A stretch of DNA of 64,000 bases from Oopsacas minuta (taxonomy: Eukaryota > Animalia > Porifera), in NCBI GenBank assembly GCA_024704765.1, contig JAKMXF010000222.1, positions 310,001 through 374,000 on the forward strand, in the 5' to 3' direction. Shown piece after piece: positions 609 through 28,082 of this stretch; the stretch's first letter is position 1; every line of letters starts with the position of its first letter. The translations under genes and the position numbers were made by a program. The notes under the pieces were generated by a model that was given only the letters and a program-made list of their open reading frames with translations, was not told the origin of the DNA and did no database searches.

Positions 609-3600
609 CATCAGGTGGACGTGAAGGCCTAGATGAAACCCAGTTGAATCGTGAAGTAGAGTCTGTAGCAAGAGATAGTACATCTGTAGCAATGGGTGTA
701 AGAGATAGGAGAAGAGATGATATATTATTAGCTTGTGATAGATTGAGAGCTGAACAGTCTGTGTTCTCTTCTGCACTGAGAAATCTTAAGGCTAATCCCA
801 ATGATGATACTCTCCAGCATAGAATGGAAGGTAGTTCTATATAACCGATAAAATATATGTTACGTCTTTGGGACCATATTTGTACAATTTCGGACTTAGA
901 TGTAAGCTGGTATTTCAATATGTGTGTTCGATATAACAGGAGTTGACTGTATTTTTGAACATTTATTTTCAATATAGGAAGTGCAGAAATGCTCTGTAAA
1001 TACATAGACGAGCTAGACAACACGGTGAGACGTGTAATACTCGAAGAAACTGTGAAAACATTCACAGATACAGACACATCACTTAGTGAATTGATTGATG
1101 CTACAAACTTAGATGATGAAGGGACACTCAGTGAGAGAGTTGGATCATTTCGCGAACACACAAACAAACTAACTAGAGTTAGTAATTATGCAGCGTCAAA
1201 AAGCGGTGAAGAAAGAGGCGTGGCTCGAATTAGATATTTATCTGAGGAAATTGATCGCTTATCACCAAGGGTGATAACTGCCGCAGAAACAGCATTCCAT
1301 ACACGCGATACTACGAATAAAGAGCATCTAAGTATGCTAAGCCGTGAATGGTTAGATCGAGTGAAGAATTTAACTCTAGCAGTTGATGACGTAGTAGATA
1401 TGAAAGAATTTATCGTAATCTGTGAAGATAATATATATTTCTACGTAACACAGTGTAGAGACGCGTTCAAGCAAGAAGAAGCTGGCTTATTGAGTACATC
1501 TGTAATTGCTGTTAAAGTGAGTTAATTTCATAGATTTGTTACAGTAGAAGTCGAATAAGACGTAAGCACGTACTAACCTATGTCTTAATCCGAGTAGGTC
1601 TAATACGAGTTCTGCTGTAATAATAATGAAACGATTGAAATAATAAAAGTAATATCATGAATTTCTGCATAACTACGTATTTTTATCCCCTCCCTATCCA
1701 AAGCCACTCATAATTATTTAAAAAATACGTATCTTGATATCAGTTGACTTAAAATAATGGGGAATAATTCCTTGTAATCTCTGGTATTTCTGACGAATAT
1801 ACGTCTACCATTTATGTAAGATAAAGTTTATTTCAAAAGTCATAGCGTATTGCCTACCCAGTTTTTAATACTCCTATTCAAGCTTGATATGGACATATAC
1901 ATCATCCAAATGATTATCAAATTTATAATCAAATTCGTACATAATTATTACCCTAATGCGTAACCATGTGGGATTAGTTACAGTATATAATTAATATCGC
2001 TCATATAAATGTGCTACATTCCTATTTTGTCACAATGTAGGGACAGTTTCAACGAGTTAAATTCATATCCTCTTTACGTAACTCGCTCATAAGCTCATTT
2101 TCGTAACACGTTGCTTTTGACTATCTAATAAATAACTTTATTAATTAGAGAAATCACCACATCCCTGTGACATGATTATTTAATTAAAAATTTTGCTTAC
2201 AACATTTTTGTAGTCAAATTTAAAGATATTGAAAGTATGCTATTACAAACTAATTTGTTAAGTTGTGTGATAATTTATTGACGTTATTAACTGAATTGAA
2301 CTGGTGTAAGATCCCCACAAAAATGAATTATTTGCAAAAACTGTACAGTTTAGCCCCAAAATATGCACTAAAAATAGATTTAATTAGTTGTCTAATCTCT
2401 AGGTATTTTCATAAAGGATATTATTCGTAGACAATTTATTAAAATTGGAAAATAGACAATTACTTTTTATTTTCATCCAAATTGAACTCCATCAGCAATA
2501 GTATACAAGTCTAGCTAGGTATTACTCCAAAATGTTCCAGAACGCCAGCAGGAAATAATTTGAATTTGATAAAGGAATTCCATAATTATAAATTTGCAAT
2601 TGCATGTGTTTTCAGTTTAAAGTGCAAATTACCCAATTAACATTACTAAATTAATACATCCGCTTGACACTAGTTTATAGCTGTCTCAATTAATAATTGC
2701 TTCCTTCTAAAATCCTATTAATCAACTGCACATCTATTCTAGGCACATTGTCTGCGGGTATTGGACATATGTCGTGCAGAACAGATGAATCGAGAAGACG
2801 AACTCTTCTGTCGAGCACTCTCAAACCAAGCTCAGCGCTTGGAGAGAGTACTCACTCGTCTTGACGTATCAGTAGCGCAAGCATGTGCTGACATGAACAA
2901 CGAATATTCACAAACACAGGTAGCCAATTCCTGTAGAGAAATATGCCAGTGTATAAAGGAAGTTAGGCAACTAGTACAAGGTAGAGGGAGACAAACAATG
3001 CATCGTGAAGAAGCATTAGAATGGACAGAGGCCAGTTGGACATCTCAAAGTCCCTCTGGGGGTAAAAAGAAGAATCACATGTTAGCAACCCACCCGCTTA
3101 GTAAGTCGTATAGTCCTCCAAGTCAATCAAAAGGCACTGAGAGGCCCATTATGACGTCATCACCAGTACACACACAAACAGAAGGAGATCTGCTTCAAAC
3201 TCCCCCGGGATTATCTGCACTCAGTAGTAGATACAGTAATGATAGTTCTCCAGGTAAATAGCTCAAATATGAAATATAATACTGAATACACATTTATGTA
3301 AAACTGCTCTCTCAGCACGATTTCCTCAACTCTAAGGTAGACAATTTTGTACCATATACCCACAAGCAATATGATATGTACTAATAATATTTTATCCAAA
3401 GGGAGCAAAAATAAGGCGAGAACAGTTTGGAATTTCACACAAGAAGACAATACAACTCCTTTCACACGAGAATCTCCTCTATACCAACAAGACACACCCC
3501 TAGACGTGTTAGCTAGGAAATCGAATAATACACAAGACTCCACACAAGTAGGAACTGAGATATCCTATACACGAAGCCCCAGGAAGGTAGAACAATGTGA

Positions 3601-6382
3601 AAACTGGTCACAGACTACCCCACACATACCGGAAGTAATACACAAATCACATCCTTATTATCTATTCGCTCTCCCTGCTGTAGGGTTAGTTAAACATATC
3701 GTACTATCGCAACCGAAACAACTTGAAGCTGAATGTACGTCACTCACAGCTAGGACTTTGAAATTAGTCAGTCTCTGTGATGAAACTGTTGAATCCTGGA
3801 AGTTTATGGGACTACCTGAAGCACGTATGCTTAGACAAGCTAGCCAGCAGGTGACTACACTCACTCCACAGGTGATTGAAGAAGCACAGTTGTTATCGGG
3901 GCAAAGCCAATCTGTACTATCACAGGATGATATACAGAATTTAGTTGGCATTGCAAAGGAATGGGTTAATAAGCTAGGCGGGATGTTAGAACCTTTGGAG
4001 AAATTCTTGACTCCTTGGTCACATCTAGGACATTCTCTCCTTGAATTGATTTTACAGGGAAAGAGACATAGTTTAGAACGACAGTTAGAGCGATTGAATA
4101 GTCTAAGTCTGTTAGTTGTTGAGTTAGGTGACGCTAGTTTGGAGAGTTTATTCCTTATGAATAGAGGGGGAGAGACGAAAGACGCGAGAGAGATTGAACG
4201 AGCTCAGACTCAACAAAAAATACAAAATTTATCAGAAGAACTTAAGCAGATCGTATCGTTTATATTAGAATGTGCAAGGGAAACACCATTGCTTAAAGAT
4301 GACGTCATTTGCCAGGAACAAGTAGCAGTTATGTGTATTGAGTGGAGTGCAAAGATAAACGGGCTTCTCAGCTGTTCCGATCAGCTGAGCGCGGGGATAA
4401 ACCAGCCCGCACATTTCTTACTGGTTTCTATAGAAGAGGGAGCATCACGTTCTACAATACAAGCTTCTATTGCTGACTTGAAGCATTTCACTGGAGAGCT
4501 TAAAGAAATTGGGAATTTAGCAATTAGCGGTTGTACAGATCAGAATATTGTTAGGCAAGTACGTGGAGCTTCTCGTGACATGGAACGGGTAATGGTTAAG
4601 GTAACTAGCATGGTGGAAGGAATACAGATAGACAAATCTAAACTGGAAGTGAGGGAGAATCTTGAAGTACAATTGAGACATTGGGCGATAAAAGCCGCGA
4701 TTATTACCTGTCTTGTTGACGAGCTGTCTCTTCAAGTTTCAGGGCCTGTTGACCAATTAGGTGGTATAGCGCTAGCCATTAGTTTAGCTGATACGTCATC
4801 TAGTAGGGAAGAATTGAAAGAGCAACTTGAAAATATATCCGCGAATCTCTCCCGAAAAATCACACAAATGTATGCACTAGCTCAACAGGTCAATGAACCA
4901 GTACAATTAGGTGCTGCTTCTTTAATCAGACCGGTAAAAGCGTCACTAATCGCGTTAAAAACCGCAACACAGAAATTGGTGGACTCAACAATTTCTCTAT
5001 CAGAAAATTCTGAACAAGAAAATGTGAATATTTTCCAACACAGACGTCGCCAATGGACTTCACTTCTACTCAAGACAATATACGCAATGGATGCGGTTGA
5101 GGATAACAAACAAATATCTCAACTCTCAAGCCTTGTACAGGAACTATTGTTACACGGTATTCCAGAAGAATTGATACCACAGGATGAAGTAATTGAAATA
5201 GATACTCCACCATCTCCAGCATCTTCCCCAATAAAATCTAAGACAATTGAAACACAAGCTGGTACAACAGCTCCATATTCCTCATACAAAGATCCATCAA
5301 GCCCTTTTACAATGCTATCCCCAGATGAGATAAGTTATTCCTCACATACAGATCACCCATATAAACTCAGAGATACAAACCCTTTTCTATCTGATCTAAC
5401 AGCTGATGAGGTTTCATATCCAACTGACCTCACGCCCTCCCTCTCTCCTAACTCCTCATATGGTAGTGGTTTTACTTTGGGATTATCTTTAGCTTCAGTT
5501 GCTAGGAAATTACATAGACAAACAGATATGTATGTAGATGTGGGTAATCCTTTAGTGGAGATTGCTAAAGAGCTTACAAAGCAAATGCTGCATATGTCTG
5601 AACTGGCCAAAGCTAGAGGTAAGCAAAACTTATTGCAAATACAGTCAATATCGGTTTTCATGAGCAATTTGACAGAAAATACAATTAGACACTATTAATC
5701 AGTTTCGACTGAATGCCCATATATGGATAGTATTATACTAATTGGCTATTTATTTTGAAAATCTACACAGTGAATTAAACCTCCACAAACGGTTGGCAGA
5801 TGCAGGAAACAGGGTAGCCATTCTCAGCGTCCTTGGCAGCTTGTTTGTGGAGGTTACACTATATTAATTTTAGGAAATGCAGAATCTAAAATGGAGATGA
5901 TAAACATTGCAAAGAAAATAGCACAAGGCACACAACAAGTAGTAGACATAGCACACGCTATAGCCGATCAGTCTGTTGACAAACGAATGCGTTCTAACCT
6001 GAAGTATTACGCAGATATGTTACCTACATTCACTAATCAACTGAGAATCCTAGCTGATGTTAAAGCTAGCATGCCGAATGATCGATCTGCTGATACTATG
6101 TTAACTAAAAACGCGGAAAATCTAATCAAAGCTGTCTCAAAGACAATTGAAGCAGCGGAGGCAACTTGCGTTAAAGGACTACAACCTTCTAATGACCCAG
6201 AGATAAAACGTACAATCCAAATGGCGAATAAATGGAAACACAAAGTATATGCCGATAGAGTAAAAGAACAGCGATATGCGAAACGAGGACCGCTAGGCCT
6301 GCGAGTTTATTCGGAAAAAGAATCGACTATACAATTCGATAGAAAACTTCCTAAAAGCAACCCATACGAATCGTACGCGTAG
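609..6382 (+). CDS. Vinculin/alpha-catenin family protein, 5'-partial (>=1332 aa visible)
   Basis: GT-AG, phase-consistent exons 609-830, 978-1516, 2743-3253, 3402-5618, 5874-6382 (the 3254-3401 intron is least certain). FREHTNKLTRV...WLDRVKNLTLAVDD resembles the alpha-catenin M domain. DKRMRSNL...LRILADVKA...NAENLIKAV resembles the vinculin tail. Confidence 0.85.
5768..5861. mobile_element. Short MITE copy inside the last intron of the vinculin-family gene
   Basis: Perfect 13-bp inverted repeat AACCTCCACAAAC / GTTTGTGGAGGTT. Same family as 306-481. Confidence 0.6.
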
Positions 6383-14024: not shown

Positions 14025-17000
14025 TCAATTGACATTCTCAATCAGTACAGCAATGCCTTGTCCACCTCCAATACATGCACTCCCGATAGCAAACTTCTTC
14101 TGTCTCCTAATCAGCTGATGCACCAGATGTGTTATAATCCTACTACCAGAAGCAGCTAGAGGGTGTCCTAGTGCTATAGCGCCTCCACACATGTTGGTTT
14201 TTTCATTAGGGAGACCAAGCTCTCGAGCTACTGCTAGGTATTGAGCTGCGAACGCTTCATTTACCTACAAAACCATTAGCATATATCAATAGTTATACAG
14301 TGTAAGGAGGCAGAAATGGTGTCTCGTAGCATTGTCTAGAGCAAGGTTTCTCAAACTTTCATGGACTATGGCCACACTTTTTAAAATTTTTATACCATGA
14401 CCACACCTAGGTCGACATACTTGTTCAACTTGGGTCATGTTTGGTCATATGACCAGAGGTTGAGAAACCTTGATCTAGAGGCCTATCTGGAATTTACTCG
14501 GTGATTTGAGTCATATAGCCTTTACCTAGTGCCCTTTATGATAAAAATGTTGGTATTTTGCAAGTTTGATTGACTACTGATAATATTCGGTTGCAACTTT
14601 GGTATTTTACCATCTAGCATTCATGATACGAACATGTATTTTCTCATAATTTCAAGCAAACCACAACTCGAACTATAGTTCCGAGGTCATAAAATTTACG
14701 CGCCTGAACCTAGTGATAATTTCATAATCGTATACAAGTAACAATTAATATAGAATATTTTGTAATAAAACTGAGCTCATGGTACCCATAAGAAACCCTT
14801 AACTTCAAAATAAATTTATGATCATATTAAAATACTACATGCATAAATCCTATCACTCATACACCATATAGTATTGTGCATATATGCAAATGTTTCAAAA
14901 CATCATAGATGGCAACACGAGGTGAGTGAGGCACAGGTGTATATTAATGCCCTAGACAAAATTGTACAATATACATCATAATTAAAATGCTAAGTTCTTA
15001 AAAGTTGATATAGAAGCATAAATCAAGTAGGTTGATCACAAAAGCCTGAGAGCATAATCTAGCGATCATATAAAAAGGGATATACAGTCATGGTAGATAT
15101 TACTCGTAGTTTTATTATCTCTGGATATTACAGATGCAGCAGAGACAGTAAACTCGTTATAACAAAGTGCTTGGGACCTCGGAATCATTTCGTATAAGCA
15201 AGCAAAATCAATTACTTTCACGATGTAGGGGGTAAAGAATCACTTCGTTATAACGGGGGTCTCGTTATATCCAACTTGTTAAGACTGTATTTGCTGAACT
15301 TTTCCCTTTAACCAGATTCCATTGCATAAAATTTTCTATATATTTGAAATGCCTGTATCTAGATGGAAGAGGAAATAGCACAATTTTTAAATAAATTAGA
15401 TTTAGAAGATTATCTCAAAGACTTCACAAGTGACCAATGTCTTCATCCAGTCAAGAATATACAAGATTTTAAAGTTTATCTTGGCAAAGAAGAAGCATTA
15501 GAAGCATTAGGTCTTACTGATGTAGAGGTTAAGAGATTTATACGAATGTGTAAAGGTACAATACACGTGAGTTAGTTGGTTATAATATGGTTTTGATTAG
15601 TTAAGCATGAATAAGCACGAGTCGTACGTAGTTCACGCACAAGAAATTCAGGGTTCTATCTACTGGGGTGGTGGGGGGTGGGAGCTTCTCCCCACAAAGT
15701 TTCTAATAATGCAATATTTTCACAATTTATTACTCCACAGCCACAGGATTTATATATATTTGGAATATTGGATGATTAAATATTATTTTCTTGTTAACTC
15801 CTCATACGTAATAAGTGATCAACCTTCGTGTTATATGAATTTTCACCATACTTCCACAGTGTTCGTATAACGAGAAACTAGTGTAATTAGGTTTTAATAC
15901 AGCCAACTCCCTGTTGTTATATCGAACATGGATATACCCACTTTTCTCGAAGTCAGAAATCGTACAAAAATATTACTTCAATTGAACTCCGCTTATATCA
16001 AAGTAATAATCTCCGTCCCTTGAGCTTCGATATAACGATAGTCGATTGTCTGTCTTGTATTTCCATTTTCGAAAGTTAAACCATATTAATCAAATAGGAA
16101 ATTCGTCCAAATGATACCCATGAAGTTACAGGAGATCCAGAACAAGAGCTTGTACGGATTCGTTACAGAATTCTTTCTCCTACACACATCCAATACTGTA
16201 AGAATGATATACTACAGGTGCCAGAGAATACACCCTATTATGGCGTCATAACACAGCTATATGAACAAATCAAACCTAGTCTAGAATACGAATGTGAGAG
16301 TATTGAGCTGTACAATGAAACAGGATACCCGTTAGTAACTATACCAGCTTACTATCTATATCCTATACAATCCTGGTTATTACGTAGTGAAGATTTGGTC
16401 TTTGCTATACCCAAAGCTCTCCAGGCTCCTTCTATTATCAATAAAGGTGAAATTAAGCATATTATTTCCATACAAACTACTAATGAAGAGATTAAACTAG
16501 AAATCGAGATTAGAACAGCTGAGAAGGATAATATAGAAATCACAGGCCTGGACATCAAGCAGGCTATCTCGTTACATATACACATTCCTGTATACTGTAT
16601 ATATCTCTACTTTAGACCATCAAATCACAGATTCCCTAACCAACTTGAAGATTCAAAAACACTAACTTTAAAATCAATTAAAGAAAAGAAAACGATCGTG
16701 CTATTCGATTTATCAGAGGAATATTGGTCGCCTACGTCACTCGATACGTACTCAAGTGAACTGACCCGTCCTTGTAACATACAACCTAATGAGTATCATG
16801 TATTACATACATTCAATGCTGAGCTTATGTATTTCGCAAGGGTACTAGCTAGCAGAAGTAAAGAAGATCAATTGTTGTTTCTCGGTAGTTTAAGAAAGAT
16901 TTCATGTTCTCCACCGCTGGTGTACGCATTCCTCCTACTCTCAGAGGGGAATTATATCTCATTACCCCATAAAATCGCGATTTTAGAGGGAGTATCAACT

Positions 17001-20000
17001 GTACTCTCATTCGCGGTTGAAAACAAGAATTCAATCCTGTGTAAATTTCCTCTTTTCGCGAGATTATGCGCTTTCGTTGAAAAATCTTCAACACCAGGTG
17101 ATCGTAGCACAGAACAATATGAACATTTATATCTACCAGCCAGAACACGTAGAAGATCAACTGATGATAATATAAAACGTTTATCAATGTCATTCCCTGA
17201 TGAGCAAAAAGAAATGATAATATGGTCAAGCGTACGTAGAGTAAATCAAAAATTCAACACAAAAATAAATCTAGACAATTCTATTAATTTCCCGTATAAA
17301 CATCCAGTTGAGCTGATGTTCGACTACATGCATAACCGAATTGAAAACGGCTTAATGGTACCTTTAAACAAAGGCAAAGAGAGTGCTGTTGTATTCACGG
17401 GAGGCTCAAATGAACCCTATAAATACCTCAAATATTATTCGCCTCTTGAAGGAAAGGCGATTACATTCCATCCACACGATTTCTCAGTCGTATCGGATTC
17501 ATTAACAGAGGATCTATCACACTGTGACGTCACCAACACAGTGATAGTATTGTTAGACATATCAAATGAAATGATTAGAACAGATCTACACTCTTCGCAG
17601 GGCTTGAAAAATAAACGCACGGATAAATCTGGATGCACACAAATAGCAGCTGGCATTATACTCATAAACACGATAATAGATAGGTTAATACGCCAAGAAA
17701 CTAACTATCTACTCGGTTTATTTATCTTCTCAAATGATCGACCTGAATTAGAGTATAATCGATTCCTCGTTACTCCAACATTGAGTTATAACGATATTGT
17801 TATCGCAATGGATGCTACACTACAATTTCTAATTCGTCCTTCTATTGCTAATCAGGTTAAAACAGCTGATAATATGCTCACGGAAGGAATTGAGTACTGT
17901 AACGGGAATTATCCAAATTCTAACATAATTTGTATTACGAATCAATCAGAAGCGAATGAAACCGCGATTACGTCATCAATCAACTGTATGGTAGTTTTTG
18001 GTGGTAAAAATGGCTGTGATAAATTAAAGAAAAAACAAGTTGGTATGCTAATAAATGAAAAGAAAATAGACCTCTATATCTCTAATGAACAGGATAAAGT
18101 CATGAACTATCCATTCAGTGAGTGGAGACTTGTTGAGTACATTGATCTAATTGAAAACCATATACGTATAGCGAATAATTTCGAGTTTGCGTTACAAAGC
18201 CCGAATTTCAAAGAATTTAACGATTATGAAGAACAGCTCCAGATGTCTGGCGACAAATACATGTCTACATCAACGCCAGAGGATATAATAGCAGTTTTAA
18301 AGGAGATTACACTTTACATGCATAATCCTAATCCCTACGCTAAAATGTTTTCCAATGGATCTCTTAAAGATTGGTCGATAACATTCGATTTTCACGGTGT
18401 AATACCGAATATTGAATTGTTAATGCATTTACCATTACGTTACCCATTGGTACCGCCTAAGTTCCGTCTTCTCTGTAGAATACATCATTGTAATGTAGAT
18501 AAGCATGGATATGTGTGTCATCCTATTTTGTTTGAAGGATATCAACATGGTATAACATTACGTAAGATAATTGATGCTATCTACAACATGCTGATTACAC
18601 CAATACCTTCTCATGCAGTGCAAACGAAAGAAGTTCTATTATACTACTCTCACAGCCAAGGTGAAGTGAATGAATCAATATTCAGTTCTTCATTCGTATC
18701 AAACAAGCTAAAAGTACATAGAAGTCAATCTGCTAAGACAACCAGAGACACCAAATTGAAATGTCCTGAATACCTCACATGCTCGCTAACCAGTCGTGTA
18801 TTCGAGAACCCAGTGATAACACCTGATGGACATACATATGATCGTGATGCAATAATCCTCTACATCAATCTAAATCATAAAGATCCAATATCAGGCAATC
18901 CATTGACTGAGGAAGACTTAACTGCGAATAAGAGTATTGCGGATGGAGTTGCTAAATATAAACGCGGTGCAAGTATTGAAAAATATTGGTGGGAACAGAA
19001 ACTTTGATTTTATTATAATTAAAGAGCTTTCAACATTATATATCTTTTTGTAAATACTAACAAGATATTTATTTATTTATTTGTATCATATTTTGTATTT
19101 GGTTATTTTTTAGTTTATACAAAGATTCTGTTGAGACTGTATTTACAATTTTTCTTACAAATTGAACTTGAACATTGTGTCCTCGCTTGATTTCGTTCCA
19201 CCATAATTGCAACTAAAATCGCCAAAATTGTCCATGGGTAAATCTATGCACTTATTGGTGATAATTAAATCAATTATTCAGGAAAATATTCATTCTTGCT
19301 ATAAAATATACTAATACAGTAGAACCTCGTTAATGCGTACACCAAGGGACCGTAGAAATTTGCACTCCTTATTCGGAGTACGTATTAACCGGAGTATATC
19401 TATTGAATAACCATTGTACGGATTAAAATTGTGTAAAATTGTGTTCGTCTTATCCGGATATTCGTATTAAATGTGTTCATATTAACGAGGTTCCACTGTC
19501 GTATGTATGCCGGATATAGATATAATAAATTTCTCAAGATCGTCCGCTTTACCTACTATATGATATAATTCATTTCAAAGTGCTTAAGAAATGATGCAAG
19601 AAGTTAAGGAAAAAGAGTTGGAAATATTATTAGAATTTCTAACAGAAAACTATGTTGAAGAGCATATGACCGCTATGGTGAAAGCAGGTGTAAAGAAACT
19701 ATCACATCTGGAAGATGTTAATGCAAAATTCTTAGAAAACTTGGGAATGGGAGAGATAGCAATTAAGCGTTTTCTCAAGAATATAGAAGAAGTTTTATCC
19801 CCAAAACCTTCCATCAGGGTAATAAATTATGATACGTATCTACTGCAAAATTTGAATTTTGTTTTATTTACGAAATATTAATTAAGAATACCCAAAAAGC
19901 AAAATAAATAACTTTCAAGTTATAGGGAGTAGAGAATCTCTTCGTTATAACGAGAGTTTACTGTAATTATTATCAGATATTTTAACGTATTTCTACACTC

Positions 20001-23000
20001 ATTTCTCTATAGATTTTACCCACATCACCTAACCCTCTTTCTATCACACCAAACTCAAGAACAATAGAATATAAACTCTACCATCATGAACTCAATCCAA
20101 TGATTATTCCATTATCAAACTTCAAAGATATTACTAATGCAACATACCGCCAGTTAGTTGAGGCTATATCAAACGAGAGCATGTTATCAGCAGACCTAAC
20201 CGTCGAGTTATATACACAAGAAGGTTATCCAATGGCTTGTAACCCTGATGCGTGTATTGCTAAGCTCAGTGAGTGGAATTTACCAGATTACGGGAATATT
20301 TTGATATATGCTATACCTAGATTAACAGTGCTACAACACGCTACAGGTTATCATAATACAAATAACATTGGGAGTGACATCATAAATATTCAACATTCGG
20401 AATCGAATTATTCTTCATCAGTTAACGTGGATTGTGAAAAACATACTCTCAAGTTCTTATTAAGGCAAATTGAACAAGAAACTGGTATCCCATACTACCT
20501 AATTTCATTCAAATACAATTCTTATATCTACAGTGAAGGCAGTCCAGATCAAATTTTAAGAGAAATTGGCATTGAACATAAGAAATCGGTTTTAAACTTA
20601 ATAATTGATACGGATTATTGGGAATCTAAATGGGACAATAATTTTAATTTCAAACTATGTAAACCAACTTGGCTATCTTCACAGTCACAATTTGGTATAA
20701 GCTACTTCTATTCAATTCTATGGACAATTTCTGTAATGTATTCTCAATCAAAGTCTCAAAGTAAGAAAAATTTACTTGGATATATCCGGTTATTAACAGC
20801 ATGTCCACCGTTAGTGCATGCGTTAACCTTGCTTTTCAATAAATTCTCATTATCTCTACCACACCGAGTCGCTATACAAGAAATTTTATTCTTGCTATTC
20901 AGTAAGCTACAACCAAAATGTACTAAAGAAGCATTAGCGAAACCTTCAATTAATTCACTTGAAATAACCGAAAATTCTCACATATTCTGGACGTATTTTA
21001 TTTCCAGGGCCGTAGAAATACATGGAGAAAGTGAAGAGTTCGAATTATACGAACTCACATGTCAAGTGTCATTAAAGAAGATGAAAGAACCAGTTTCACT
21101 GAAGCATCGTAGCGGAATAATTCAAATACTTGATAGAGGAACAGTAATGAAAATGGCATTAATAGAAAATAGCATGAATATGAAACTTTTAAATGATGTT
21201 AAACGAATTATTCGGTCATTTCCAAGCTCAGATACAACTGCATTAGTTTGGAAATGTCAATCAGACGCAGCGAAAAATTCTACTTCAATCGCGAATAATA
21301 TCACGTATGAAGAATGGTTGAGTTTAATTGAATTATCTGCGAAAGATCACCAATTTTTGATCATACAATCACCGACAAAAATCAAGGATCATATGTGGTC
21401 ATCTTTTCCTTGCATTATTCCTACCGTGGGTAAGTATGTGTGTTTGTGTTTACAACGAGCCAAAGGTAGAGATAGGAAAACACCAATTCATGACGTCATC
21501 GAAGGAGATGGATCGTTAATTGATATTGATGAACATGATATGAGAATTAAAGAGGTTGGGCTTGAATGGTGCGGGACAGGAAATGCGAATTTGAGTGCGA
21601 TAACTCGTGACAACATCCGAGCTGTAACAAGAACACCTCGTGAGATTATATTAGTGCTACTAGACGTTAGTCTATCAATGGAAGAACCATCTTACCATTT
21701 CACTGATTGTTCTGAGATTAGAAAAATTGAAATGGTGCATCGAGCATTTTTAATGTTTGCAGATCGAACTAAAGCGTATAATTTCCATCATTTAATTGGG
21801 CTAGTTCCATTCGCTGCTACTCCTACGCTAGCATTTCCTCTTTCAGAATCGTTTGATGCGTTTTCGAGGAAATTAGAAAATATCCCACTTAAAGCATGTA
21901 CTGCACTATATGATGCGATATCTTTCGCGAATGAGGCGTTTAACCAATTCGCAGTGGAACATCCCCAGTATATTCAAGGTGTAAAAAAACGAATTCTATG
22001 CCTAACAGATGGTATCGACCATCACTCGCATATAACAAACGAACAAGCTCTCCAACTATTAATTGACAATGATATAATAATGGATTTGATATTATTATGT
22101 GAGGGAGAAGATTTTCTATGTGGAGAGGGAGCACATCATCTAGCTAAGCTAAGCGGTGGTTATTCATTCTATCCAACGAACGAAACTGATTTCAATAAAC
22201 TTCTTGAATTAGAAACATTAATCAGTCTACAATGTAGAAAAGAAATCATTCCATTTTTCAAAAAAGGTGAGACTGTCGATATAAAATGCACGGAGTTTCC
22301 ATCTTGTGATTATGAACCTCAGTACGCGATTCCAGAAGCAGCTGAACTTAAAGTTGAAATGAGTGAAAAATGTTTAAGTAGAATTATTCAAGAGAGAAAA
22401 CTTTTAACTGAACAAGTTTGGAGGGGTAAAAAGATACATATACTACAACAACTGGCTTATTTCCATCAAAATAAAGATATAAACATTCCTCTTAACGTAT
22501 TTCCCTGTGTAGAGGATATTACATTTTGGCAGGTATTATTCGAAGGACCTGATAATTCGCCTTATAAGGGCGGTGTATTTCGGCTATATGTAGATTTCGA
22601 AGGCGAATATCCTATTAAACCTCCTAAAGTGCGGTTTTTAACACCAATTTATCATTGTAATATAAACAGTGTAGGGAGAGTGTGTCATGCAATTTTAGAT
22701 CAATTTTATGCATCGAATGTTAAAGTACGAGATATTTTATATTATGTCTTCCACCTATTATCTGATCCAGAACCTGACGACCCGTTGAACGCAATTCAAG
22801 CTGACGAACTCAAACATAGCCCAGATATGTATTACAAAAAAGCTACAGAACATACTCGATTATTCGCAACACAAAAAACTATGACTGAATTGAGAATCGA
22901 ATTATTAGGTGGAGAGGAAATAGTTGATAAATATAAAGCAGAAGCTACTTTAATATGTCCTTTAAGCTTAGAACTATTTCAGGATCCTGTTATCACTAAT

Positions 23001-26000
23001 ACAGAAGGATTAACTTATGAGAGGAAATATATTGAAGAATATATTGATGAAAATCATTGTGATCCTATTACGCGTTCTGTTCTAGAAAAATCCAATCTTG
23101 TAGCTAATTTAGCTATAGCTAAACAGGCTGGTAGAGTAAGAACTGAGTTCGAAGATCTGTCCAAATGAATGTATTATATGTATTAATTTCGGAATTTTAT
23201 TTTGTATAATTACTCATTTTATAATTTATAAGCTCGATTGTTGTCTATTTATTTGTTTGGATATTGAATAATTGTTGTAATGCAGTTGCAAAACTAAAAG
23301 AAATCTGCATAATCTGTATTAACCAGTGTCGGATTATGCAGGTTCACTGTATGAAATATTGTTAAAACAGGTTAATTATAAACAACTCACATCTAATATA
23401 TCGATATCCTCTAGTGTTTTTCCAGACTTTTTGAGTACTCCTCTAATAGCTGGTGCTGGGCCTATTCCCATAATGCTAGGTTCTACTCCTGCAACATCTG
23501 CACATACAACTCTAGCTAGTGGTTTTAAGTTGTGTTTCTTAACTGCTTCCTCACTGGCTACAATGACAGCACCTGCTCCATCACAAATACCCTATACAAT
23601 AGTGTGTTATCATCATTTATTTTATTTTACACAATTAAATACAAACACAGTTCATCGATATACAGTAGAATCGGTTAGTACGTGCTTTCCTCCAAAATTG
23701 TTTTTTTTCTGCTTGTACTAATCGTACAGGAAAATATTCGGATAAGTTGTACTACTTTTTGTTTCCCGATAGGCTGCGAGGGGGTAAGTTTGCGGATTCC
23801 AACCTTTCCGCTCGTGGACCCCCTGCTGTCGTCCGCGGACCTCAGGTTGGGAACCGCTGGGGCAAGTCTTATCCGAATTCTACTGTACCTCTTAATATGA
23901 TGATTAAAATTCTTAGTCCATAGTATATAAGAATGATCAGCTGATCAGTTGAAATTAATATTAGAATTGATAAGCTATATATGACCAAAACTAATGAAGC
24001 ATATAATAAATTATAATAGATTTTCTGAGAGAGAATGGCAACTGAAGCAAATCCTCGGGGAAAAGAAATATACAAGTACTCTGCACCATGGCCTGTATAT
24101 GCAATGAATTGGTCCTTTAGACCAGACCACAGATATCGTCTTGCAGTTGGTAGTTTCGTAGAAGAGTATAGTAACAAAATACAGATTGTTTCTCTCTCAA
24201 ATGAAACTGGAGAATTTGAAGTTAAATACCAGTTCGATCATCCTTACCCCTCCACCCGGATAAACTGGATACCGGATCCCACGGGACAGATGCCGGATAT
24301 TCTAGCAACATCCGGTGATTACCTACGTATATGGCGTGTCAATAGCTCTGAGGTAAAACTAGAAACTTTATTGAATAATAACAAAACTTCAGAATTCTGC
24401 GCTCCATTAACTTCGTTCGATTGGAATGAAGTAGATCCTCAACTAATCGGCACATGTAGTATTGACACTACCTGTACAATATGGTCGATAGAAACCGCAC
24501 AAGTTGTAAGTCGCACTAAGCCTACTCAACTAACTGGTACAATTAAAACACAGCTGATCGCTCATGATAAAGAAGTATACGATATTTCATTCTCGAAATC
24601 TGACAAAGGTCGCGATCTGTTCATTTCCTGCGGTGCGGATGGTTCAATACGTTTGTTCGATCTGCGAAATTTAGAGCATTCAACTATAATATACGAGGAT
24701 CAACAACACAAAGCATTGCTAAGACTGGCCTGGAACAAACAAGATACAAACTATATAAGCGCTATAGCGATAGATAGTACTGAAGTGAACCTAATTGACA
24801 TACGTGCACCAGGAACACCTGTAGGAGTACTACAGAATCACCAATCGCAACTTAATGGTATATCATGGGCACCACACTCTTCTTGTCATATATGCACAGC
24901 TGCTGATGACAAAAAGGCGTTAATCTGGGATATCCAAAATCTATCACGGCCTATTGAAGATCCTTTGCTTGCTTACCAAGCTGATGGAGAAATTAATCAA
25001 GTACATTGGTCTACACTGCATCCAGATTGGATAGCGATCTGCTACAAATCTAACCTAGAGATATTGAGGGTGTAATGGAATGCATCCTATCTCAAACCCC
25101 CAAGCTCTCAAAATTTCACCAAACATTTGATAATGCTATGCTAATTTATTGTGAGATTAGTTGTTTATTTGTGTTTTCTAACTAAATTGGGCTTTGCCTA
25201 TACATCCACCATCCATATTCTACTAAACACTTCTTTCATTAAAAAACTTAACATTAACTATTAATCTTCCTAGTTTCTTATTTTGCTGATCTGACGTTTA
25301 CTACGAATATAGATTTTTACTAAATAAAACAATGGTTTTTGAATGGATTACCTACACTCATAACACACAACCTATATTCTACCAAATAGTCCTAATTATA
25401 GGCTCATTCAAATGCGTTGTAACACTACTCAACTTCCTATACTGGCTACTAACATCACTATACATATTCTACTTATCCTCACCACCTGATTTAAAGAAGA
25501 CAGGTGAATGGGCAGTTGTAACAGGTTGTACTGACGGTATTGGGAAGGGATACACGGAGAAATTAGCTAGCTATGGACTGAATATAGTTTTGATGAGTAG
25601 ATCACAAGAAAAACTCGAAAAAACAATCAGCATATCTTATAGAAAAATATCAAATTAAAACTATTATCATTAAGATAGATTTCGGTACAGCAAGCAAAGA
25701 ACTCAACCAATCAATCGAACTGATACTTACTCAACTAGATATTGGCGTGCTTGTAAACAACGTAGGAATGGTAGTGGAATATCCTATATTCTTCTGTGAT
25801 AAAGACAATACGTTAACAGATATAGAAACAATGCTTAATGTATGTTGTAGATCTTTCATAAAAATTACTCACATGGTTTTACCTAGCATGCTAGAACGAA
25901 ATAGAGGAGTTATCATAAATATTGCATCTGGTGCTGGACTACAACCTATTCCACTTCTAAGTATATACTCAGCATGCAAAGCATTAATGAAGACAGCTTC

Positions 26001-28082
26001 ACAAGCTTTGGATATAGAATATAATTCAAGTGATTTGATCATACAAACAGTTACACCGTTTCTTATCGCCACAAAACTCAGTCGTATGAAAAAGCCTAGA
26101 ATATCTGTTCCAAGTTCAGATCAATTCGTTGAACAAGCTATGCGTACTATAGGAAAATACAGCAGTACTACTGGTTACTTTTCGCATGAAATAATCGCAG
26201 GCATGAGACAGATAATGCCTGTGTTCATAGATCAATGGTTTTTCTTTAATATAACAATATTACGCTTGAAGTATGGCCAGAGAATAAAAGAAAAACTCAA
26301 TAGAAGTAATTGAGATAATTAATTACGAATTTTATGTACGTATAAAGTTATGTATGATAGTAGTTACAAGAAATGTTCGAATCAAATTGGATAGAGATCA
26401 AAAGATCTCAATACAATTCTAATATGGGGAAATATACAAATAACTTATATATAGCTCAACTATACTATAGTACAGTTTTTGTATATTAGCTTTTCTATGT
26501 TCGAGGAAAGGTCATTTGTTAGGCCTAACGAAAGTCACCTTTTTGGAATGAGGGTATGGCGTTTTTGTATTACAAAAACTGTACTAAAACTATAGTTGAG
26601 TTATATATAAGGAATCTGGGAAATATAATACAGTATTCACGATTTTGCATTTTTTATCTTTCAAAGCGCTGTATATACGTATTTATGTTCATGAAACTCC
26701 TATTACGATCACTTATGCATTCACTACCGAACGTTAGTTTCGAAATTTTCTGATACAAATATTTGAGTAGTATTTATAATTGAACGTACGTAGAAAAATC
26801 AATAAACTTACAGAAGCATTTCCTGCAGTCACAACTCCATTCTTCTTAAACACAGGTTTCAGCTTAGCTAGTTGCTCTATTGTAGTTATTTTAGGATGTT
26901 CATCTGTTTTGAAATCTTCCTTTCCTTTCTTGCCTTTAACTTGAATAGAACAGATTTCTTCATCGAATCTACCATCCTTATTAGCTATATACACGAAAGT
27001 TGGATTCATTTAATATGTAATTTTACACCAAATACAGAATTATTCATGTTTACCTTCATTCCATCTGTTCTGCGTCTGTAGTGCATAGTTGTCGCAGTCC
27101 TCTCTGCTAATATCGTACTTCTCAGCTAGATTCTCAGCTGTTATCGCCATTGGAAGATTACAATAAGTGTCACTCAATCCAGCCCAAAGAGTATCTTCAA
27201 ACTAACAATATTACTTGTTATCAACATATCCTGATAATTTGTCCATTGCCTTTTCAATTATAATCACGGTTAATACAATAATTACAAATTTTGTATTCGC
27301 ATTCAATTGTAACGGAACGAATATCCAATATATGACACTATTTGAATTAAATATTTATAAATTACAAATAGTGTACCTTCAAATCAATTCCTAATCTAGT
27401 TCCCCATCTAGCATCATAACTAGCTAGAGGAGCCATACTCATGTTCTCTGTGCCTCCTGTCAGGACTATTTGACTGTTTCCGAGAGCTATAGCCTAAACA
27501 TTATATCACAAATTATAGAATGCTATAAATATACGAAAATCGGGAAATGTATCATCTCGAATAAGTACATTCAACTCTATGTAGTATTTCGAAAACGGAA
27601 AAGGTCCACAAATTAGCCATTTTATTGATTTCAAAAACCGCATAAAAAGCGAAAATTGTGAGGAACATTTGCCCAATAAAACTAGAGTTGACTGTTACGT
27701 ATATCACCTCAGCAGCTGTAACTATAGATTGGAATCCAGATCCACACAGTCTATTAACTGTAAGAGCAATAGAGGAGATAGGAGCACCTGAATGTAGTCC
27801 TACATGTCTAGCTACATAGATACCATCACTTGAGGACTATAAATTGAGAAAAATGACTCATTTCGAGTTTATATAATAAGTTATATTCCAATATCTCACC
27901 TGTATTACATTTCCCATTACAACAGAATCAATATGTTCAGGCGGTATTTTACCAGCTAGTATAGTAGCTTTTGAAGCAGCTATAGCTAACTGTGTAGCTG
28001 TAGTGTTCTTAAGCTTACCTCCAAATGTACCGAATGGAGTTCTCTTAGCAGCTACTATGAATACTCCTCGAAACAAGGCCAT
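14025..28082 (-). CDS. ACAA2: 3-ketoacyl-CoA thiolase, mitochondrial (396 aa, 7 exons)
   Basis: Exons 28082-27900, 27836-27708, 27493-27377, 27201-27054, 26984-26812, 23591-23391, 14264-14025, all GT-AG and phase-consistent. Motifs [15 protein letters not shown] (catalytic Cys), [35 protein letters not shown]. Confidence 0.95.
14342..14472. mobile_element. hAT/Charlie-like MITE
   Basis: Perfect 13-bp TIR CAAGGTTTCTCAA / TTGAGAAACCTTG. TSD GTCTAGAG / ATCTAGAG matches the NTCTAGAN target preference of Charlie-type hATs. Confidence 0.8.
15146..15287. mobile_element. Tc1/mariner-like MITE (CAGTAAACTCGTTATAAC family), degenerate
   Basis: Starts CAGTAAACTCGTTATAAC and ends ...ACTGTA. A matching inverted end TTCGTTATAACGAGAGTTTACTGTA occurs near 19941-19965. 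Confidence 0.5.
15363..19007 (+). CDS. SAM-Ubl-vWA-UBC-U-box protein, paralog 1 (997 aa)
   Basis: Exons 15363-15566 (SAM-like) and 16218-19007, phase-0 GT-AG intron. QLEDSKTL resembles ubiquitin QLEDGRTL. vWA-like [27 protein letters not shown]-box [19 protein letters not shown]...DPISG. Confidence 0.85.
19317..19498. mobile_element. Tc1/mariner-like MITE
   Basis: TIR CAGTAGAACCTCGTTAAT / ATTAACGAGGTTCCACTG (17/18 match), TA on the left flank. Confidence 0.8.
19591..23168 (+). CDS. SAM-Ubl-vWA-UBC-U-box protein, paralog 2 (1127 aa)
   Basis: Exons 19591-19818 and 20013-23168, phase-0 GT-AG intron. vWA MIDAS DVSLS...TALYD...LTDG intact. [15 protein letters not shown]...[13 protein letters not shown]-box [12 protein letters not shown]...YER...DPITR. 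Confidence 0.9.
23663..23885. mobile_element. Tc1/mariner-like MITE carrying a nested hAT-like insert (23790-23859)
   Basis: Outer ends CAGTAGAATCGG / CCGAATTCTACTG flanked by TA. Inner element reads CAGCGGTTCCCAACCT on the minus strand, with flanks GGGTAAGT / GGGCAAGT. Confidence 0.7.
24035..25075 (+). CDS. DCAF7: DDB1- and CUL4-associated factor 7 (WDR68), intronless, nested in ACAA2 intron 5
   Basis: [48 protein letters not shown]-terminal LEILRV. Confidence 0.97.
   Translation: MATEANPRGKEIYKYSAPWPVYAMNWSFRPDHRYRLAVGSFVEEYSNKIQIVSLSNETGEFEVKYQFDHPYPSTRINWIPDPTGQMPDILATSGDYLRIWRVNSSEVKLETLLNNNKTSEFCAPLTSFDWNEVDPQLIGTCSIDTTCTIWSIETAQVVSRTKPTQLTGTIKTQLIAHDKEVYDISFSKSDKGRDLFISCGADGSIRLFDLRNLEHSTIIYEDQQHKALLRLAWNKQDTNYISAIAIDSTEVNLIDIRAPGTPVGVLQNHQSQLNGISWAPHSSCHICTAADDKKALIWDIQNLSRPIEDPLLAYQADGEINQVHWSTLHPDWIAICYKSNLEILRV
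25332..26313 (+). CDS. HSD17B12: Very-long-chain 3-oxoacyl-CoA reductase (HSD17B12-like SDR), with a 1-nt frameshift at ~25618-25623
   Basis: N-terminal [23 protein letters not shown] and YSACK (YxxxK). Removing one A from the A6 run restores a continuous 326-aa ORF ([24 protein letters not shown]). Confidence 0.85.

What the first reader, a model, noticed from the sequence alone, without database searches (positions are those of the whole stretch)
15363..23168. Tandem pair of single-chain E2-E3 ubiquitination proteins: SAM-Ubl-vWA-UBC-U-box
Each gene joins, in one polypeptide, a SAM-like exon, a ubiquitin-like domain, a vWA domain, a UBC domain that keeps the catalytic Cys (HCN in place of HPN; G[YR]VCH.IL) and a C-terminal U-box. 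A U-box normally recruits a separate E2~Ub, so the fusion suggests a self-contained ligase needing only E1. SAM could oligomerise it and vWA/Ubl could sense substrate. I know of no characterised animal protein with this architecture; vWA-UBC fusions with the HCN motif are uncharacterised proteins I recall from fungi and protists. The copies share intron position and phase but are highly diverged and lie nested in a housekeeping gene. This would fit a fast-evolving, possibly immune-type family (inference).
Basis: partly seen in the sequence, partly recalled or inferred. Interest (0 to 1): 0.82.

Follow-up and report, generated by a model that had tools for sequence, protein, structure and literature searches.

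The report
Paired single-chain E2-U-box ligase genes
Two neighbouring glass-sponge genes each encode one long protein carrying both a ubiquitin-conjugating (E2) domain and a U-box ligase (E3) domain. They are real and expressed, but they belong to a widespread, already catalogued and still untested protein family, not to a sponge invention.

Summary
The window is Oopsacas minuta. Gene 1 (15363-19007) is LOD99_725 and gene 2 (19591-23168) is LOD99_726. Transcript-like contigs of one public run carry both predicted GT..AG splices joining the SAM exon to the long exon, and both 5' ends carry a spliced-leader-like tag.

Gene 2 reads SAM, two Ubl domains, a helical part, an internal U-box-like fold, an alpha/beta part, vWA with an intact MIDAS, UBC (HCN, Cys-His) and a CHIP-like U-box.

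The architecture is not new. 76 relatives were found in sponges, Saccoglossus, many ray-finned fishes, Paramecium, Pelomyxa, Dictyostelium and Mimivirus ('bifunctional E2/E3 enzyme R795'). HCN...G..C is invariant in them. I found no experimental study.

Gene 1 belongs to a derived subtype: internal U-box deleted, MIDAS degenerate, acidic gate loop replaced, Cys and U-box kept. This subtype lies beside a canonical gene at five Oopsacas loci, and two such pairs are conserved in other species. At this locus, three related assemblies have gene 1 without gene 2.

Orthologues are not unusually fast-evolving. Self-contained E1-only ligase activity is plausible but untested. This scan already found the family on two other pieces of this genome, with the same reading.

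The parts
15363..15566 (+). Gene 1 (LOD99_725) exon 1, 68 aa, SAM-like. The ATG follows an AG acceptor at 15361-15362 where transcript contigs carry a leader-like tag.
   Evidence: SAM_TNK 18.3 bits, below the cutoff of 25; joint and loose end; the exon is conserved 44-65% upstream of orthologues; best solved hit is the DGK-delta SAM at E 0.06, so the assignment is inconclusive.
15567..16097 (+). Gene 1 intron, phase 0, GTGAGT..AG. It holds a weak inverted repeat at 15896-16056.
   Evidence: joint 15566>16098, skips 531, two contigs of X4..
16098..19007 (+). Gene 1 exon 2, 969 aa plus stop. Derived subtype: two Ubl-like regions, a helical part (internal U-box deleted), a vWA-derived domain, UBC and U-box.
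16152..16712 (+). Gene 1 tandem Ubl-like region (Ubl1 16152-16418, Ubl2 16458-16712), placed by alignment to gene 2.
   Evidence: Not folded separately.
17541..18170 (+). Gene 1 vWA-derived domain with a degenerate MIDAS: DISNE in place of DxSxS, Thr lost, LTDG replaced by ITN.
   Evidence: No Pfam hit. BLASTP to the gene 2 vWA gives E 0.03. hhalign of the subtype profile against the family vWA profile gives 96.9%, E 1.9e-10. Motifs.
18291..18680 (+). Gene 1 UBC domain. HCN at 18486-18494, catalytic Cys807 codon at 18516-18518. The gate loop reads PIPSHAV in place of PEPDDPL.
   Evidence: UQ_con 51 bits, model positions 48-126; nearest solved chains are Ubc13 and UBE2D, E 1e-10..
18762..18953 (+). 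Gene 1 C-terminal U-box, followed by a YWWE tail.
   Evidence: 46 bits..
19316..19499 (.). MITE-like inverted-repeat element in the spacer between the two genes. It is not part of either gene.
   Evidence: 27-nt arms, 85% complementary; contig depth about 2,400-3,800 (X1-X3) in the bin that holds the element (19240-19436), against about 60-160 in flanking bins.
19591..19818 (+). Gene 2 (LOD99_726) exon 1, 76 aa, SAM (SAM_TNK type). A leader-like tag sits at the AG acceptor 19578-19579.
   Evidence: 33.5 bits against a cutoff of 25..
19819..20012 (+). Gene 2 intron, phase 0, GTAATA..AG.
   Evidence: joint 19817>20012 with cut +1, skips 194, in one 3525-nt contig of X4.
20013..23168 (+). Gene 2 exon 2, 1051 aa plus stop. 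Canonical family member.
20064..20606 (+). Gene 2 tandem Ubl domains (Ubl1 20064-20324, Ubl2 20376-20606).
   Evidence: model pLDDT 86, pTM 0.90; di-ubiquitin and ISG15 hits. Z 12.3; profile against ubiquitin.
20688..21032 (+). Gene 2 helical subdomain. It carries the conserved Q..G.S.F.S.LY motif at the start of a long helix.
21039..21236 (+). Gene 2 internal U-box/RING-like fold without zinc ligands.
   Evidence: 43 of the top 50 exhaustive structure hits are U-box, RING or SP-RING domains, Z 5.3-7.4, on model residues 139-204. Foldseek probability 0.97-0.99 but E 0.4-1; profile hits LubX at E 0.02 and CHIP at 0.34; near-canonical motif in Amphimedon.
21237..21617 (+). Gene 2 alpha/beta subdomain, fold not assigned.
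   Evidence: weak papain-like/DUB resemblance together with the helical part.
21648..22247 (+). Gene 2 vWA domain with an intact MIDAS (DVSLS at 21663-21677).
   Evidence: VWA_2 38.7 bits. D, S, M, T and D columns invariant or nearly so..
22425..22862 (+). Gene 2 UBC domain. HCN at 22653-22661, catalytic Cys891 codon at 22683-22685, followed by His. PEPDDPL gate kept.
   Evidence: 115 bits; nearest are Plasmodium Ubc13 and UBE2D, E about 1e-26..
22938..23132 (+). Gene 2 C-terminal U-box, CHIP-like.
   Evidence: 47 bits. CHIP U-boxes at E 2e-9.
14025..14192 (-). Last coding piece of the host thiolase gene. Further exons lie at about 23379-23591, 26734-27177 and 27858-28082. Both genes sit in its intron.
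   Evidence: Thiolase_N and Thiolase_C are called at the syntenic loci.

Best explanation
SHOWN. These are two expressed, spliced, protein-coding genes of the glass sponge Oopsacas minuta. They belong to an old eukaryote-wide family of multidomain E2/E3 hybrid proteins, the 'R795-like' family. The family core is Ubl, a helical part with an internal U-box-like fold, vWA with MIDAS, and a UBC carrying an invariant HCN...G..C-H signature. Animal members add an N-terminal SAM and a C-terminal CHIP-like U-box.

Gene 2 is a canonical member. Gene 1 belongs to a derived glass-sponge subtype that has lost the internal U-box, the metal-site residues of the vWA and the acidic gate loop of the UBC. It keeps the catalytic Cys, the HxN Asn and a well conserved U-box.

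INFERRED mechanism.
- The UBC of gene 2 is charged by E1 on Cys891.
- A U-box then closes and activates the E2~Ub. This could be its own U-box in cis through the roughly 25-residue linker, or a neighbour's U-box in trans within SAM- or U-box-mediated oligomers.
- The vWA MIDAS holds the substrate or a partner through an acidic residue.
- The tandem Ubl and the middle module regulate the enzyme or bind ubiquitin.
- Gene 1-type proteins are specialised partners or regulators of canonical-type proteins. Their genes lie side by side at five loci.
For: Gene models.
- Spliced contigs with both joints.
- 100% matches to LOD99_725 and LOD99_726.
- SAM exons conserved upstream of the orthologues.
- Paralogues with the SAM-like start in the same open frame as the long part.

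Domains.

Family.
- 76 relatives, from E 0 down to E 4e-7; Mimivirus P0072 is at E 1.9e-45.
- HCN...C in 76 of 78 sequences scanned, i.e. 74 of the 76 relatives plus genes 1 and 2.
- Invariant MIDAS and HCN/G/C columns in 44 aligned sequences.
- Pfam tally over those 44: UQ_con 44, VWA_2 43, U-box 38, ubiquitin 18, SAM_TNK 12.
- An ESM Atlas cluster of 458 members with the same three domains.

The UBC is nearest Ubc13/UBE2D and the U-box is nearest CHIP. CHIP has solved complexes with both kinds of E2: 2c2v, 2oxq and 9ye9 appear.

Subtype and pairing.
- Searches give the consistent subtype changes.
- the subtype forms one clade, SH-aLRT 99.
- head-to-head pairs are conserved in two other assemblies, with partners 54-56% identical.

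Constraint: gene 1 orthologues are 57-73% identical with no stop codons.
Against: - No biochemical datum exists for any family member that I could find.
- The UBC/U-box docking could not be predicted, because the job was not folded.
- The E3-binding loop 7 of canonical E2s (WSPAL in the Ubc13 alignment) reads YASNV in gene 2, so ordinary U-box docking is not assured.
- The effect of Pro>Cys in HPN is unknown.
- Protist members lack the C-terminal U-box, so the UBC can evidently work without it.
- Pairing of the subtypes may only reflect block duplication plus the strong microsynteny of glass sponges (PMC10282587).
- At this very locus, three related assemblies have gene 1 without gene 2. The tandem arrangement here is therefore probably recent.
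Confidence: 0.6

Rival explanations
1. The fused UBC is not the E2 served by the fused U-box. The U-box (or U-boxes) recruits a separate free E2 such as UBE2D or Ubc13. The built-in UBC does another step (priming versus elongation, E4-like) or acts as a non-catalytic ubiquitin-binding, UEV-like module.
For: Loop 7 of the UBC differs from the SPA motif of U-box-binding E2s (alignment). Gene 1 gives a faint UEV hit (E 0.02) and lacks the acidic gate. Protist members have the UBC without the C-terminal U-box.
Against: His, Asn and the catalytic Cys are invariant in all relatives carrying the motif, which argues for catalysis. Hydrophobic residues stand at the UBE2D Phe62 / Ubc13 Met64 position (Ile in gene 2, Leu in gene 1).
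Confidence: 0.2
2. This is a fast-evolving, immune-type expanded family whose diversity reflects an arms race.
For: About 11-12 copies in a 61-Mb genome, clustered. Tandem copies in fishes and Saccoglossus, and TRIM-like RING fusions in flatfish homologues. An eel homologue is listed in an immune-defence table and moves with CXCL10/11 and GBP5.
Against: Orthologues are moderately conserved, between the rates of neighbouring housekeeping genes. Oopsacas copies fall into at least five orthogroups shared with other assemblies, so the expansion is old rather than ongoing. There are no expression data after challenge.
Confidence: 0.12
3. The sponge genes were acquired horizontally from giant viruses.
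For: Mimivirus and one giant-virus MAG encode relatives.
Against: Viral sequences form their own long-branched clade away from the sponge clades. The family occurs in ciliates, amoebozoans, hemichordates and fishes. The sponge genes have introns, spliced leaders and conserved synteny.
Confidence: 0.04
4. Gene 1 is a decaying duplicate with no function of its own.
For: It has lost the Pfam-detectable vWA, the MIDAS residues, the internal U-box and the gate loop.
Against: The frame is intact. It is transcribed and spliced. Orthologues are 57-73% identical across at least four assemblies. The same changes are shared by three paralogues and their orthologues, and the U-box is strongly conserved.
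Confidence: 0.03

Closest known systems
Mimivirus R795 ('probable bifunctional E2/E3 enzyme R795') and the database proteins named after it
   Same: Full-length homology (P0072, E 1.9e-45). Shares vWA with MIDAS, a UBC with HCN...GRVCH, a Ubl and a U-box in one chain.
   Different: The viral protein has an N-terminal RING. Its only Pfam U-box lies before the vWA (residues 682-747), not after the UBC. It has no SAM. Its function is predicted from domains only, as far as I could find.
CHIP (STUB1) U-box working with UBE2D or Ubc13-Uev1a
   Same: The C-terminal U-box is nearest CHIP (E 2e-9). The UBC is nearest Ubc13/UBE2D. It is the same catalytic logic of a U-box activating an E2~Ub.
   Different: Here the two are one polypeptide. 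Loop 7 of the E2 is changed, HPN is HCN, and substrate recognition would be by vWA/Ubl rather than by TPR.
E2/E3 hybrid enzymes UBE2O and BIRC6
   Same: Large single chains in which a UBC domain ubiquitinates substrates without a separate E3 (from established knowledge).
   Different: They have no U-box or RING cooperating with the UBC, and their architecture and family are unrelated.
Plant RGLG1/2 (vWA/copine + RING, acting with Ubc13-type UBC35)
   Same: A vWA domain joined to a RING-class ligase domain in the ubiquitin system (papers listed). The Ubc13 link is from my own knowledge.
   Different: The E2 is separate, the finger is a RING not a U-box, and no homology beyond the domain classes was tested here.
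Ubc13 with its catalytically inert partner Uev1a/Mms2
   Same: A possible analogy for the canonical and derived gene pairs: an active E2 with a diverged E2-like partner.
   Different: Gene 1-type proteins keep the catalytic Cys. No interaction has been tested, so this is an analogy only.

Membership tests
R795-like vWA-UBC(HCN)-U-box family (database family, untested biochemically) | Significant full-length similarity to members across eukaryotes and Mimivirus | tested here: met
   gene 2 has 76 hits, with E 2e-45 to Mimivirus; gene 1 falls in a clade inside the family tree.
R795-like vWA-UBC(HCN)-U-box family (database family, untested biochemically) | UBC with HCN and G-x-x-C-H in place of HPN and C-L | tested here: met
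   for both genes. The other gene 1-type paralogues have HPN.
R795-like vWA-UBC(HCN)-U-box family (database family, untested biochemically) | vWA with a complete MIDAS (DxSxS, T, D) upstream of the UBC | tested here: met
   Met for gene 2. Not met for gene 1: the fold homology is kept, but S>E, Thr lost and D>N.
R795-like vWA-UBC(HCN)-U-box family (database family, untested biochemically) | N-terminal ubiquitin-like domain(s) | tested here: met
   for gene 2. Gene 1 by alignment only.
Catalytically active class of UBC-fold E2 enzymes | HPN motif, catalytic Cys, acidic gate residue (PxxDDPL) | tested here: inconclusive
   Cys, His and Asn are present in both genes. Pro is replaced by Cys in both. 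The gate is kept in gene 2 and replaced (S-H) in gene 1.
Catalytically active class of UBC-fold E2 enzymes | E1-dependent ubiquitin thioester on the Cys | not testable with these tools
   Needs a biochemical assay.
U-box E3 ligases | U-box domain above the Pfam threshold with the conserved core | tested here: met
   46 and 47 bits against a cutoff of 21.4; nearest is CHIP.
U-box E3 ligases | Binding and activation of an E2~Ub | not testable with these tools
   The complex-prediction job was counted but not folded.
SAM domain (SAM_TNK type) | Profile match above threshold | tested here: inconclusive
   Gene 2 is met (33.5 against 25). Gene 1 scores 18.3, below 25. The subtype profile against solved structures gives DGK-delta SAM at E 0.06 only. 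The gene 1 exon hits the SAM exon of the gene 2 orthologue at E 3e-4.
FERM domain (talin-like F0-F3), considered for the N-terminal half | F2 helical plus F3 PH/PTB-like lobes after the Ubl lobes | tested here: not met
   Talin heads appeared for the 540-residue model with rmsd about 25 A. When residues 205-540 were folded and searched alone, no FERM hit appeared.
Clan CA (papain-like) deubiquitinases, considered for the middle module | Gln, Cys at a helix start, and a His on the beta lobe | tested here: not met
   There are weak fold hits: ZUFSP, UfSP, PLP2 and OTUB1 at Z 5.2-6.2; CYLD and C39 at TM 0.3-0.4. The conserved Q and helix-start position carry Ser/Thr, not Cys, and there is no conserved His.

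The most novel reading that the evidence does not exclude
The canonical and derived genes encode a two-component ubiquitin relay. The derived (gene 1-type) UBC keeps its Cys but has Ser-His where lysine-reactive E2s have Asp-Asp; from memory, this resembles the Cys-only-reactive UBE2L3. It would pass ubiquitin by transthiolation to, or receive it from, the canonical partner. The invariant second Cys of that partner (HCN) would serve as a relay site. SAM-SAM contacts would hold the pair together, and a pseudo-deubiquitinase-like middle module would position the acceptor ubiquitin.
Probability: 0.08. Interest if true: 0.85.

Novelty: new member of a known kind. Interest (0 to 1): 0.5.

Why it matters
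If the inferred mechanism holds, this family would be a natural one-chain E2-E3 machine needing only E1. That would be useful for understanding how a RING-class domain activates an E2~ubiquitin when the two are tethered. It could also serve as a template for engineered degraders.

It would give a function to hundreds of unnamed proteins in fishes, hemichordates, sponges, protists and giant viruses. A family survey from 2010 held a vWA + U-box gene to be lost in animals (PMC3087547). If that gene belongs to this family, the present data correct that view.

The conserved pairing of an intact type with a stripped-down type in glass sponges offers a testable case of enzyme and partner co-evolution.

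Tried and rejected
1. Complex prediction of the gene 2 UBC (795-955) with its U-box (968-1051). The job was counted but not folded, because a chain resembles a protein of a eukaryotic virus. I did not try to obtain the same answer with another tool.
2. FERM/talin reading of the N-terminal half. Rejected after folding residues 205-540 alone.
3. Active-deubiquitinase reading of the middle module. Only weak fold hits, and no Cys or His. Kept as a lead only.
4. Positional equivalence of the Mimivirus U-box (682-747) with the sponge internal U-box-like fold. The full-length alignment does not align them, so this is left open.
5. Literature. Searches for R795, vWA/UBC/U-box fusions and teleost homologues found no functional study. 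Marin 2010 (PMC3087547) describes a Monosiga vWA + U-box gene as lost in animals and does not mention a UBC. A search for the UBE2L3 gate residue found nothing, so that comparison rests on memory.
6. The fast-evolution claim was checked against neighbouring genes and not upheld.
7. The exhaustive protein search was not run.
The spliced products entered only as the database records P0001 and P0077. All my own searches used single exons by reference.
9. The run type of X4 is not on record. I infer RNA from the spliced joints, the low intron depth and the leader tags.

Full report
WHAT IS THERE

The region holds two long open frames on the + strand, 16218-19007 and 20100-23168. Both stay open upstream to AG acceptors at 16096-16097 and 20011-20012. 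Each is preceded by a short ATG-initiated open frame, 15363-15566 and 19591-19818, ending at a GT donor. Both introns are phase 0 and lie between the SAM-like exon and the first ubiquitin-like domain.

The spliced products are identical to two annotated Oopsacas minuta proteins. LOD99_726 is 1127 aa, which is 76 + 1051. LOD99_725 is 1037 aa, which is 68 + 969. The assembly size and contig number (61.46 Mb, 365 contigs) match the published genome as tabulated in PMC10282587.

EXPRESSION AND SPLICING

Four runs of one study hold the stretch. Three behave as DNA. The fourth, X4, carries contigs with GT..AG joints 15566>16098 and 19817>20012 (cut +1). Its depth is low inside both introns.

Three independent observations support the same gene models:
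- SAM exons are conserved upstream of the orthologues of both genes in other assemblies.
- Two paralogues carry the SAM-like start in the same open frame as the rest of the protein.
- X4 contigs for both genes begin with the same short foreign tag, ending in CTTAC, right at an AG acceptor just upstream of each ATG.

The genome holds nine copies of that tag followed by GT, against two for the control pattern. Four of the nine, when aligned, are about 170-nt near-identical units in which the tag ends at a CAG|GTAAGT donor. That is the look of spliced-leader RNA genes. Trans-splicing has been reported for the glass sponge Aphrocallistes (PMC10282587).

DOMAINS OF GENE 2

Pfam gives SAM_TNK, VWA_2, UQ_con (115 bits) and U-box.

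- A family profile of the N-terminal half hits ubiquitin at E about 4e-8.
- The AlphaFold model of residues 1-540 of the long exon is confident (pLDDT 86, pTM 0.90). It shows two tandem Ubl domains. The second superposes on ubiquitin at Z 12.3, rmsd 1.1 A over 71 residues.
- Residues 205-540, folded alone (pLDDT 85.5), show a helical part, a roughly 65-residue insert and an alpha/beta part.
- In an exhaustive structure search, 43 of the top 50 hits were U-box, RING or SP-RING domains laid on that insert (Z 5.3-7.4).
- Foldseek gave U-boxes at probability 0.97-0.99 but with weak E-values.
- The sequence profile independently hit LubX and CHIP U-boxes (E 0.02-0.4).
- In Amphimedon the corresponding stretch is close to a canonical U-box motif.

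I therefore read it as a second, internal, degenerate U-box-like fold.

The vWA has a complete MIDAS. The UBC is nearest Plasmodium Ubc13 and UBE2D (E about 1e-26). It keeps His, Asn, the catalytic Cys and the acidic PEPDDPL gate. The C-terminal U-box is nearest CHIP (E 2e-9).

THE FAMILY

The word search found 76 relatives:
- sponges (Amphimedon and many unnamed assemblies);
- Saccoglossus;
- many ray-finned fishes, nearly all labelled 'uncharacterized' and one labelled 'putative bifunctional E2/E3 enzyme R795-like';
- Paramecium, Pelomyxa and Dictyostelium;
- Mimivirus.

No tetrapod was among them. One giant-virus MAG also has a relative. The ESM Atlas has a 458-member cluster with the same three Pfam domains.

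The HCN...G..C signature was found in 76 of 78 sequences scanned: 74 of the 76 relatives plus genes 1 and 2. In a 44-sequence alignment the invariant columns are the MIDAS Asp/Ser/Met and His-Cys-Asn, Gly and Cys of the UBC. The Pfam tally over that alignment is UQ_con 44, VWA_2 43, U-box 38, ubiquitin 18 and SAM_TNK 12.

So the whole SAM-Ubl-vWA-UBC-U-box plan is a family property, not a sponge fusion. I found no experimental paper on any member. One eel transcriptome lists a homologue in an immune-defence table.

TWO SUBTYPES AND THEIR PAIRING

The Oopsacas genome has about 11-12 copies. They fall into a canonical type (gene 2 and six others) and a derived type (gene 1 and three or four others).

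The derived type forms one clade (SH-aLRT 99) and shares these changes:
- the internal U-box is deleted;
- MIDAS reads DxSx[D/E], its Thr is lost and LTDG becomes [IL]TN;
- the gate loop PEPDDPL becomes P[IV]xSHxV;
- the catalytic Cys-His is kept;
- the U-box is strongly conserved and ends in a YWW[D/E] tail.

Its vWA origin is still detectable by profile-profile comparison (96.9%, E 1.9e-10).

The other derived copies have HPN. Gene 1 and its orthologue P0083 have HCN.

A derived gene lies next to a canonical gene at five loci:
- tandem here;
- head-to-head on C19 and C44;
- tail-to-tail twice on C111.

The C19 and C44 head-to-head pairs are conserved in two other assemblies, with partners 54-56% identical.

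At the present locus, however, three related assemblies have the gene 1 orthologue in the same vinculin/DCAF7/SDR/thiolase setting without gene 2. The gene 2 orthologue sits beside PEX13 elsewhere. The tandem arrangement in this window is therefore most simply a relocation in the Oopsacas lineage.

RATE AND CONTEXT

Between Oopsacas and those assemblies the identities are as follows:

| Gene | Identity |
|---|---|
| DCAF7 | 88-94% |
| Thiolase N-terminus | 75-82% |
| Gene 2 | 67% |
| Gene 1 | 57-69% |
| Neighbouring SDR | 51-52% |

The genes are under ordinary constraint. The 25% identity between them reflects an old split.

Both lie in an intron of a - strand thiolase. Nesting is common in glass-sponge genomes.

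MECHANISM

Shown: architecture, conservation of the catalytic and metal-site residues, expression and pairing.

Inferred:
- E1 charges the UBC Cys.
- A U-box of the same chain or of a neighbouring chain activates the thioester.
- The vWA MIDAS binds substrate.
- The Ubl domains and the middle module regulate the enzyme or bind ubiquitin.
- Derived-type proteins act with canonical ones.

Points of caution:
- The loop 7 SPA motif used by U-box-binding E2s is changed.
- The meaning of the invariant extra Cys in HCN is unexplained.
- Protist members do without the C-terminal U-box.
- The docking prediction was not performed by the tool.

COMPARISON AND VERDICT

The nearest named relative is Mimivirus R795, a domain-based prediction of a bifunctional E2/E3. 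The nearest working analogue is CHIP with Ubc13 or UBE2D. UBE2O and BIRC6 are E2/E3 hybrids of a different build.

Gene 2 is a new member of a catalogued but unstudied family. Gene 1 represents a glass-sponge variant of it.

Two earlier reports of this scan, on other pieces of the same genome (s1-284886 and s1-273571), reached the same reading. I saw them only after my own tests.

Noticed in passing
window 15361-15362 and 19578-19579; G000 C10:47280, C10:77418, C10:92154, C16:67145 (L028-L031) and five more places: Transcript-like contigs of both genes start with the same foreign tag ending in CTTAC at an AG acceptor. The genome has nine copies of the tag followed by GT (control: two). Four of them, aligned, are about 170-nt near-identical units with the tag ending at CAG|GTAAGT. 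These are candidate spliced-leader RNA genes of Oopsacas.
   Followed up: partly
window 15363-26313: Four + strand genes (gene 1, gene 2, DCAF7 at 24035-25075, an SDR at 25332-26313) sit in introns of the - strand thiolase, with spacers of about 260-870 nt. With leader trans-splicing, they could be cut from one precursor. This was not tested.
   Followed up: no
window 19316-19499: MITE-like element with 27-nt inverted arms between the two genes. Contig depth in the bin that holds it (19240-19436) is about 2,400-3,800 in the DNA-like runs X1-X3, against about 60-160 in flanking bins, so it is a high-copy repeat.
   Followed up: partly
L023 (ENA ERZ25766962 ctg17114) against window 19591-23168: The orthologue of gene 2 lies beside PEX13 in a related assembly, and is absent from the thiolase/DCAF7 locus of three assemblies. 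Gene 2 seems to have moved next to gene 1 in the Oopsacas lineage.
   Followed up: partly
window 20688-21617 (gene 2 residues 226-535): Helical plus alpha/beta parts around the internal U-box-like insert give weak but repeated hits to papain-like ubiquitin/Ubl proteases (ZUFSP, UfSP, PLP2, OTUB1, CYLD, C39). A conserved Gln stands six residues before a Ser/Thr at a helix start, the spacing of papain Gln19/Cys25 (from memory). There is no conserved His. It may be a dead protease-like fold.
   Followed up: partly
window 22653-22661 and the family alignment A2: The Cys that replaces Pro in the HPN motif is invariant in all 44 aligned family members, and a His follows the catalytic Cys in nearly all. 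No explanation was found; a redox switch or a relay site are guesses.
   Followed up: no
window 18954-19004; L013, L019, L026, L027 C-termini: Derived-type proteins, and some canonical ones (C210, Saccoglossus), end in a conserved YWW[D/E] or WW[D/Q] tail after the U-box. Gene 2 lacks it.
   Followed up: no
G000 C19:59381-62312, C19:63651-66448, C111:1214449-1217502, C111:1210849-1213556: Several paralogues are split into two overlapping or adjacent open frames in different frames. These may be short introns, frameshifts or assembly errors. One derived-type copy on C111 (1221590 region) looks fragmentary.
   Followed up: no
P0001 (LOD99_726) database record: UniRef names this protein 'non-specific protein-tyrosine kinase'. 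That appears to be carried over from the SAM_TNK domain. No kinase domain is present.
   Followed up: yes
PMC5560681, immune-defence table: An eel gene annotated as a 'bifunctional E2/E3 enzyme R795' homologue falls to 0.18-fold after nematode infection, together with CXCL10/11, GBP5 and GIMAPs. This is a weak hint of interferon-type regulation in fishes.
   Followed up: no
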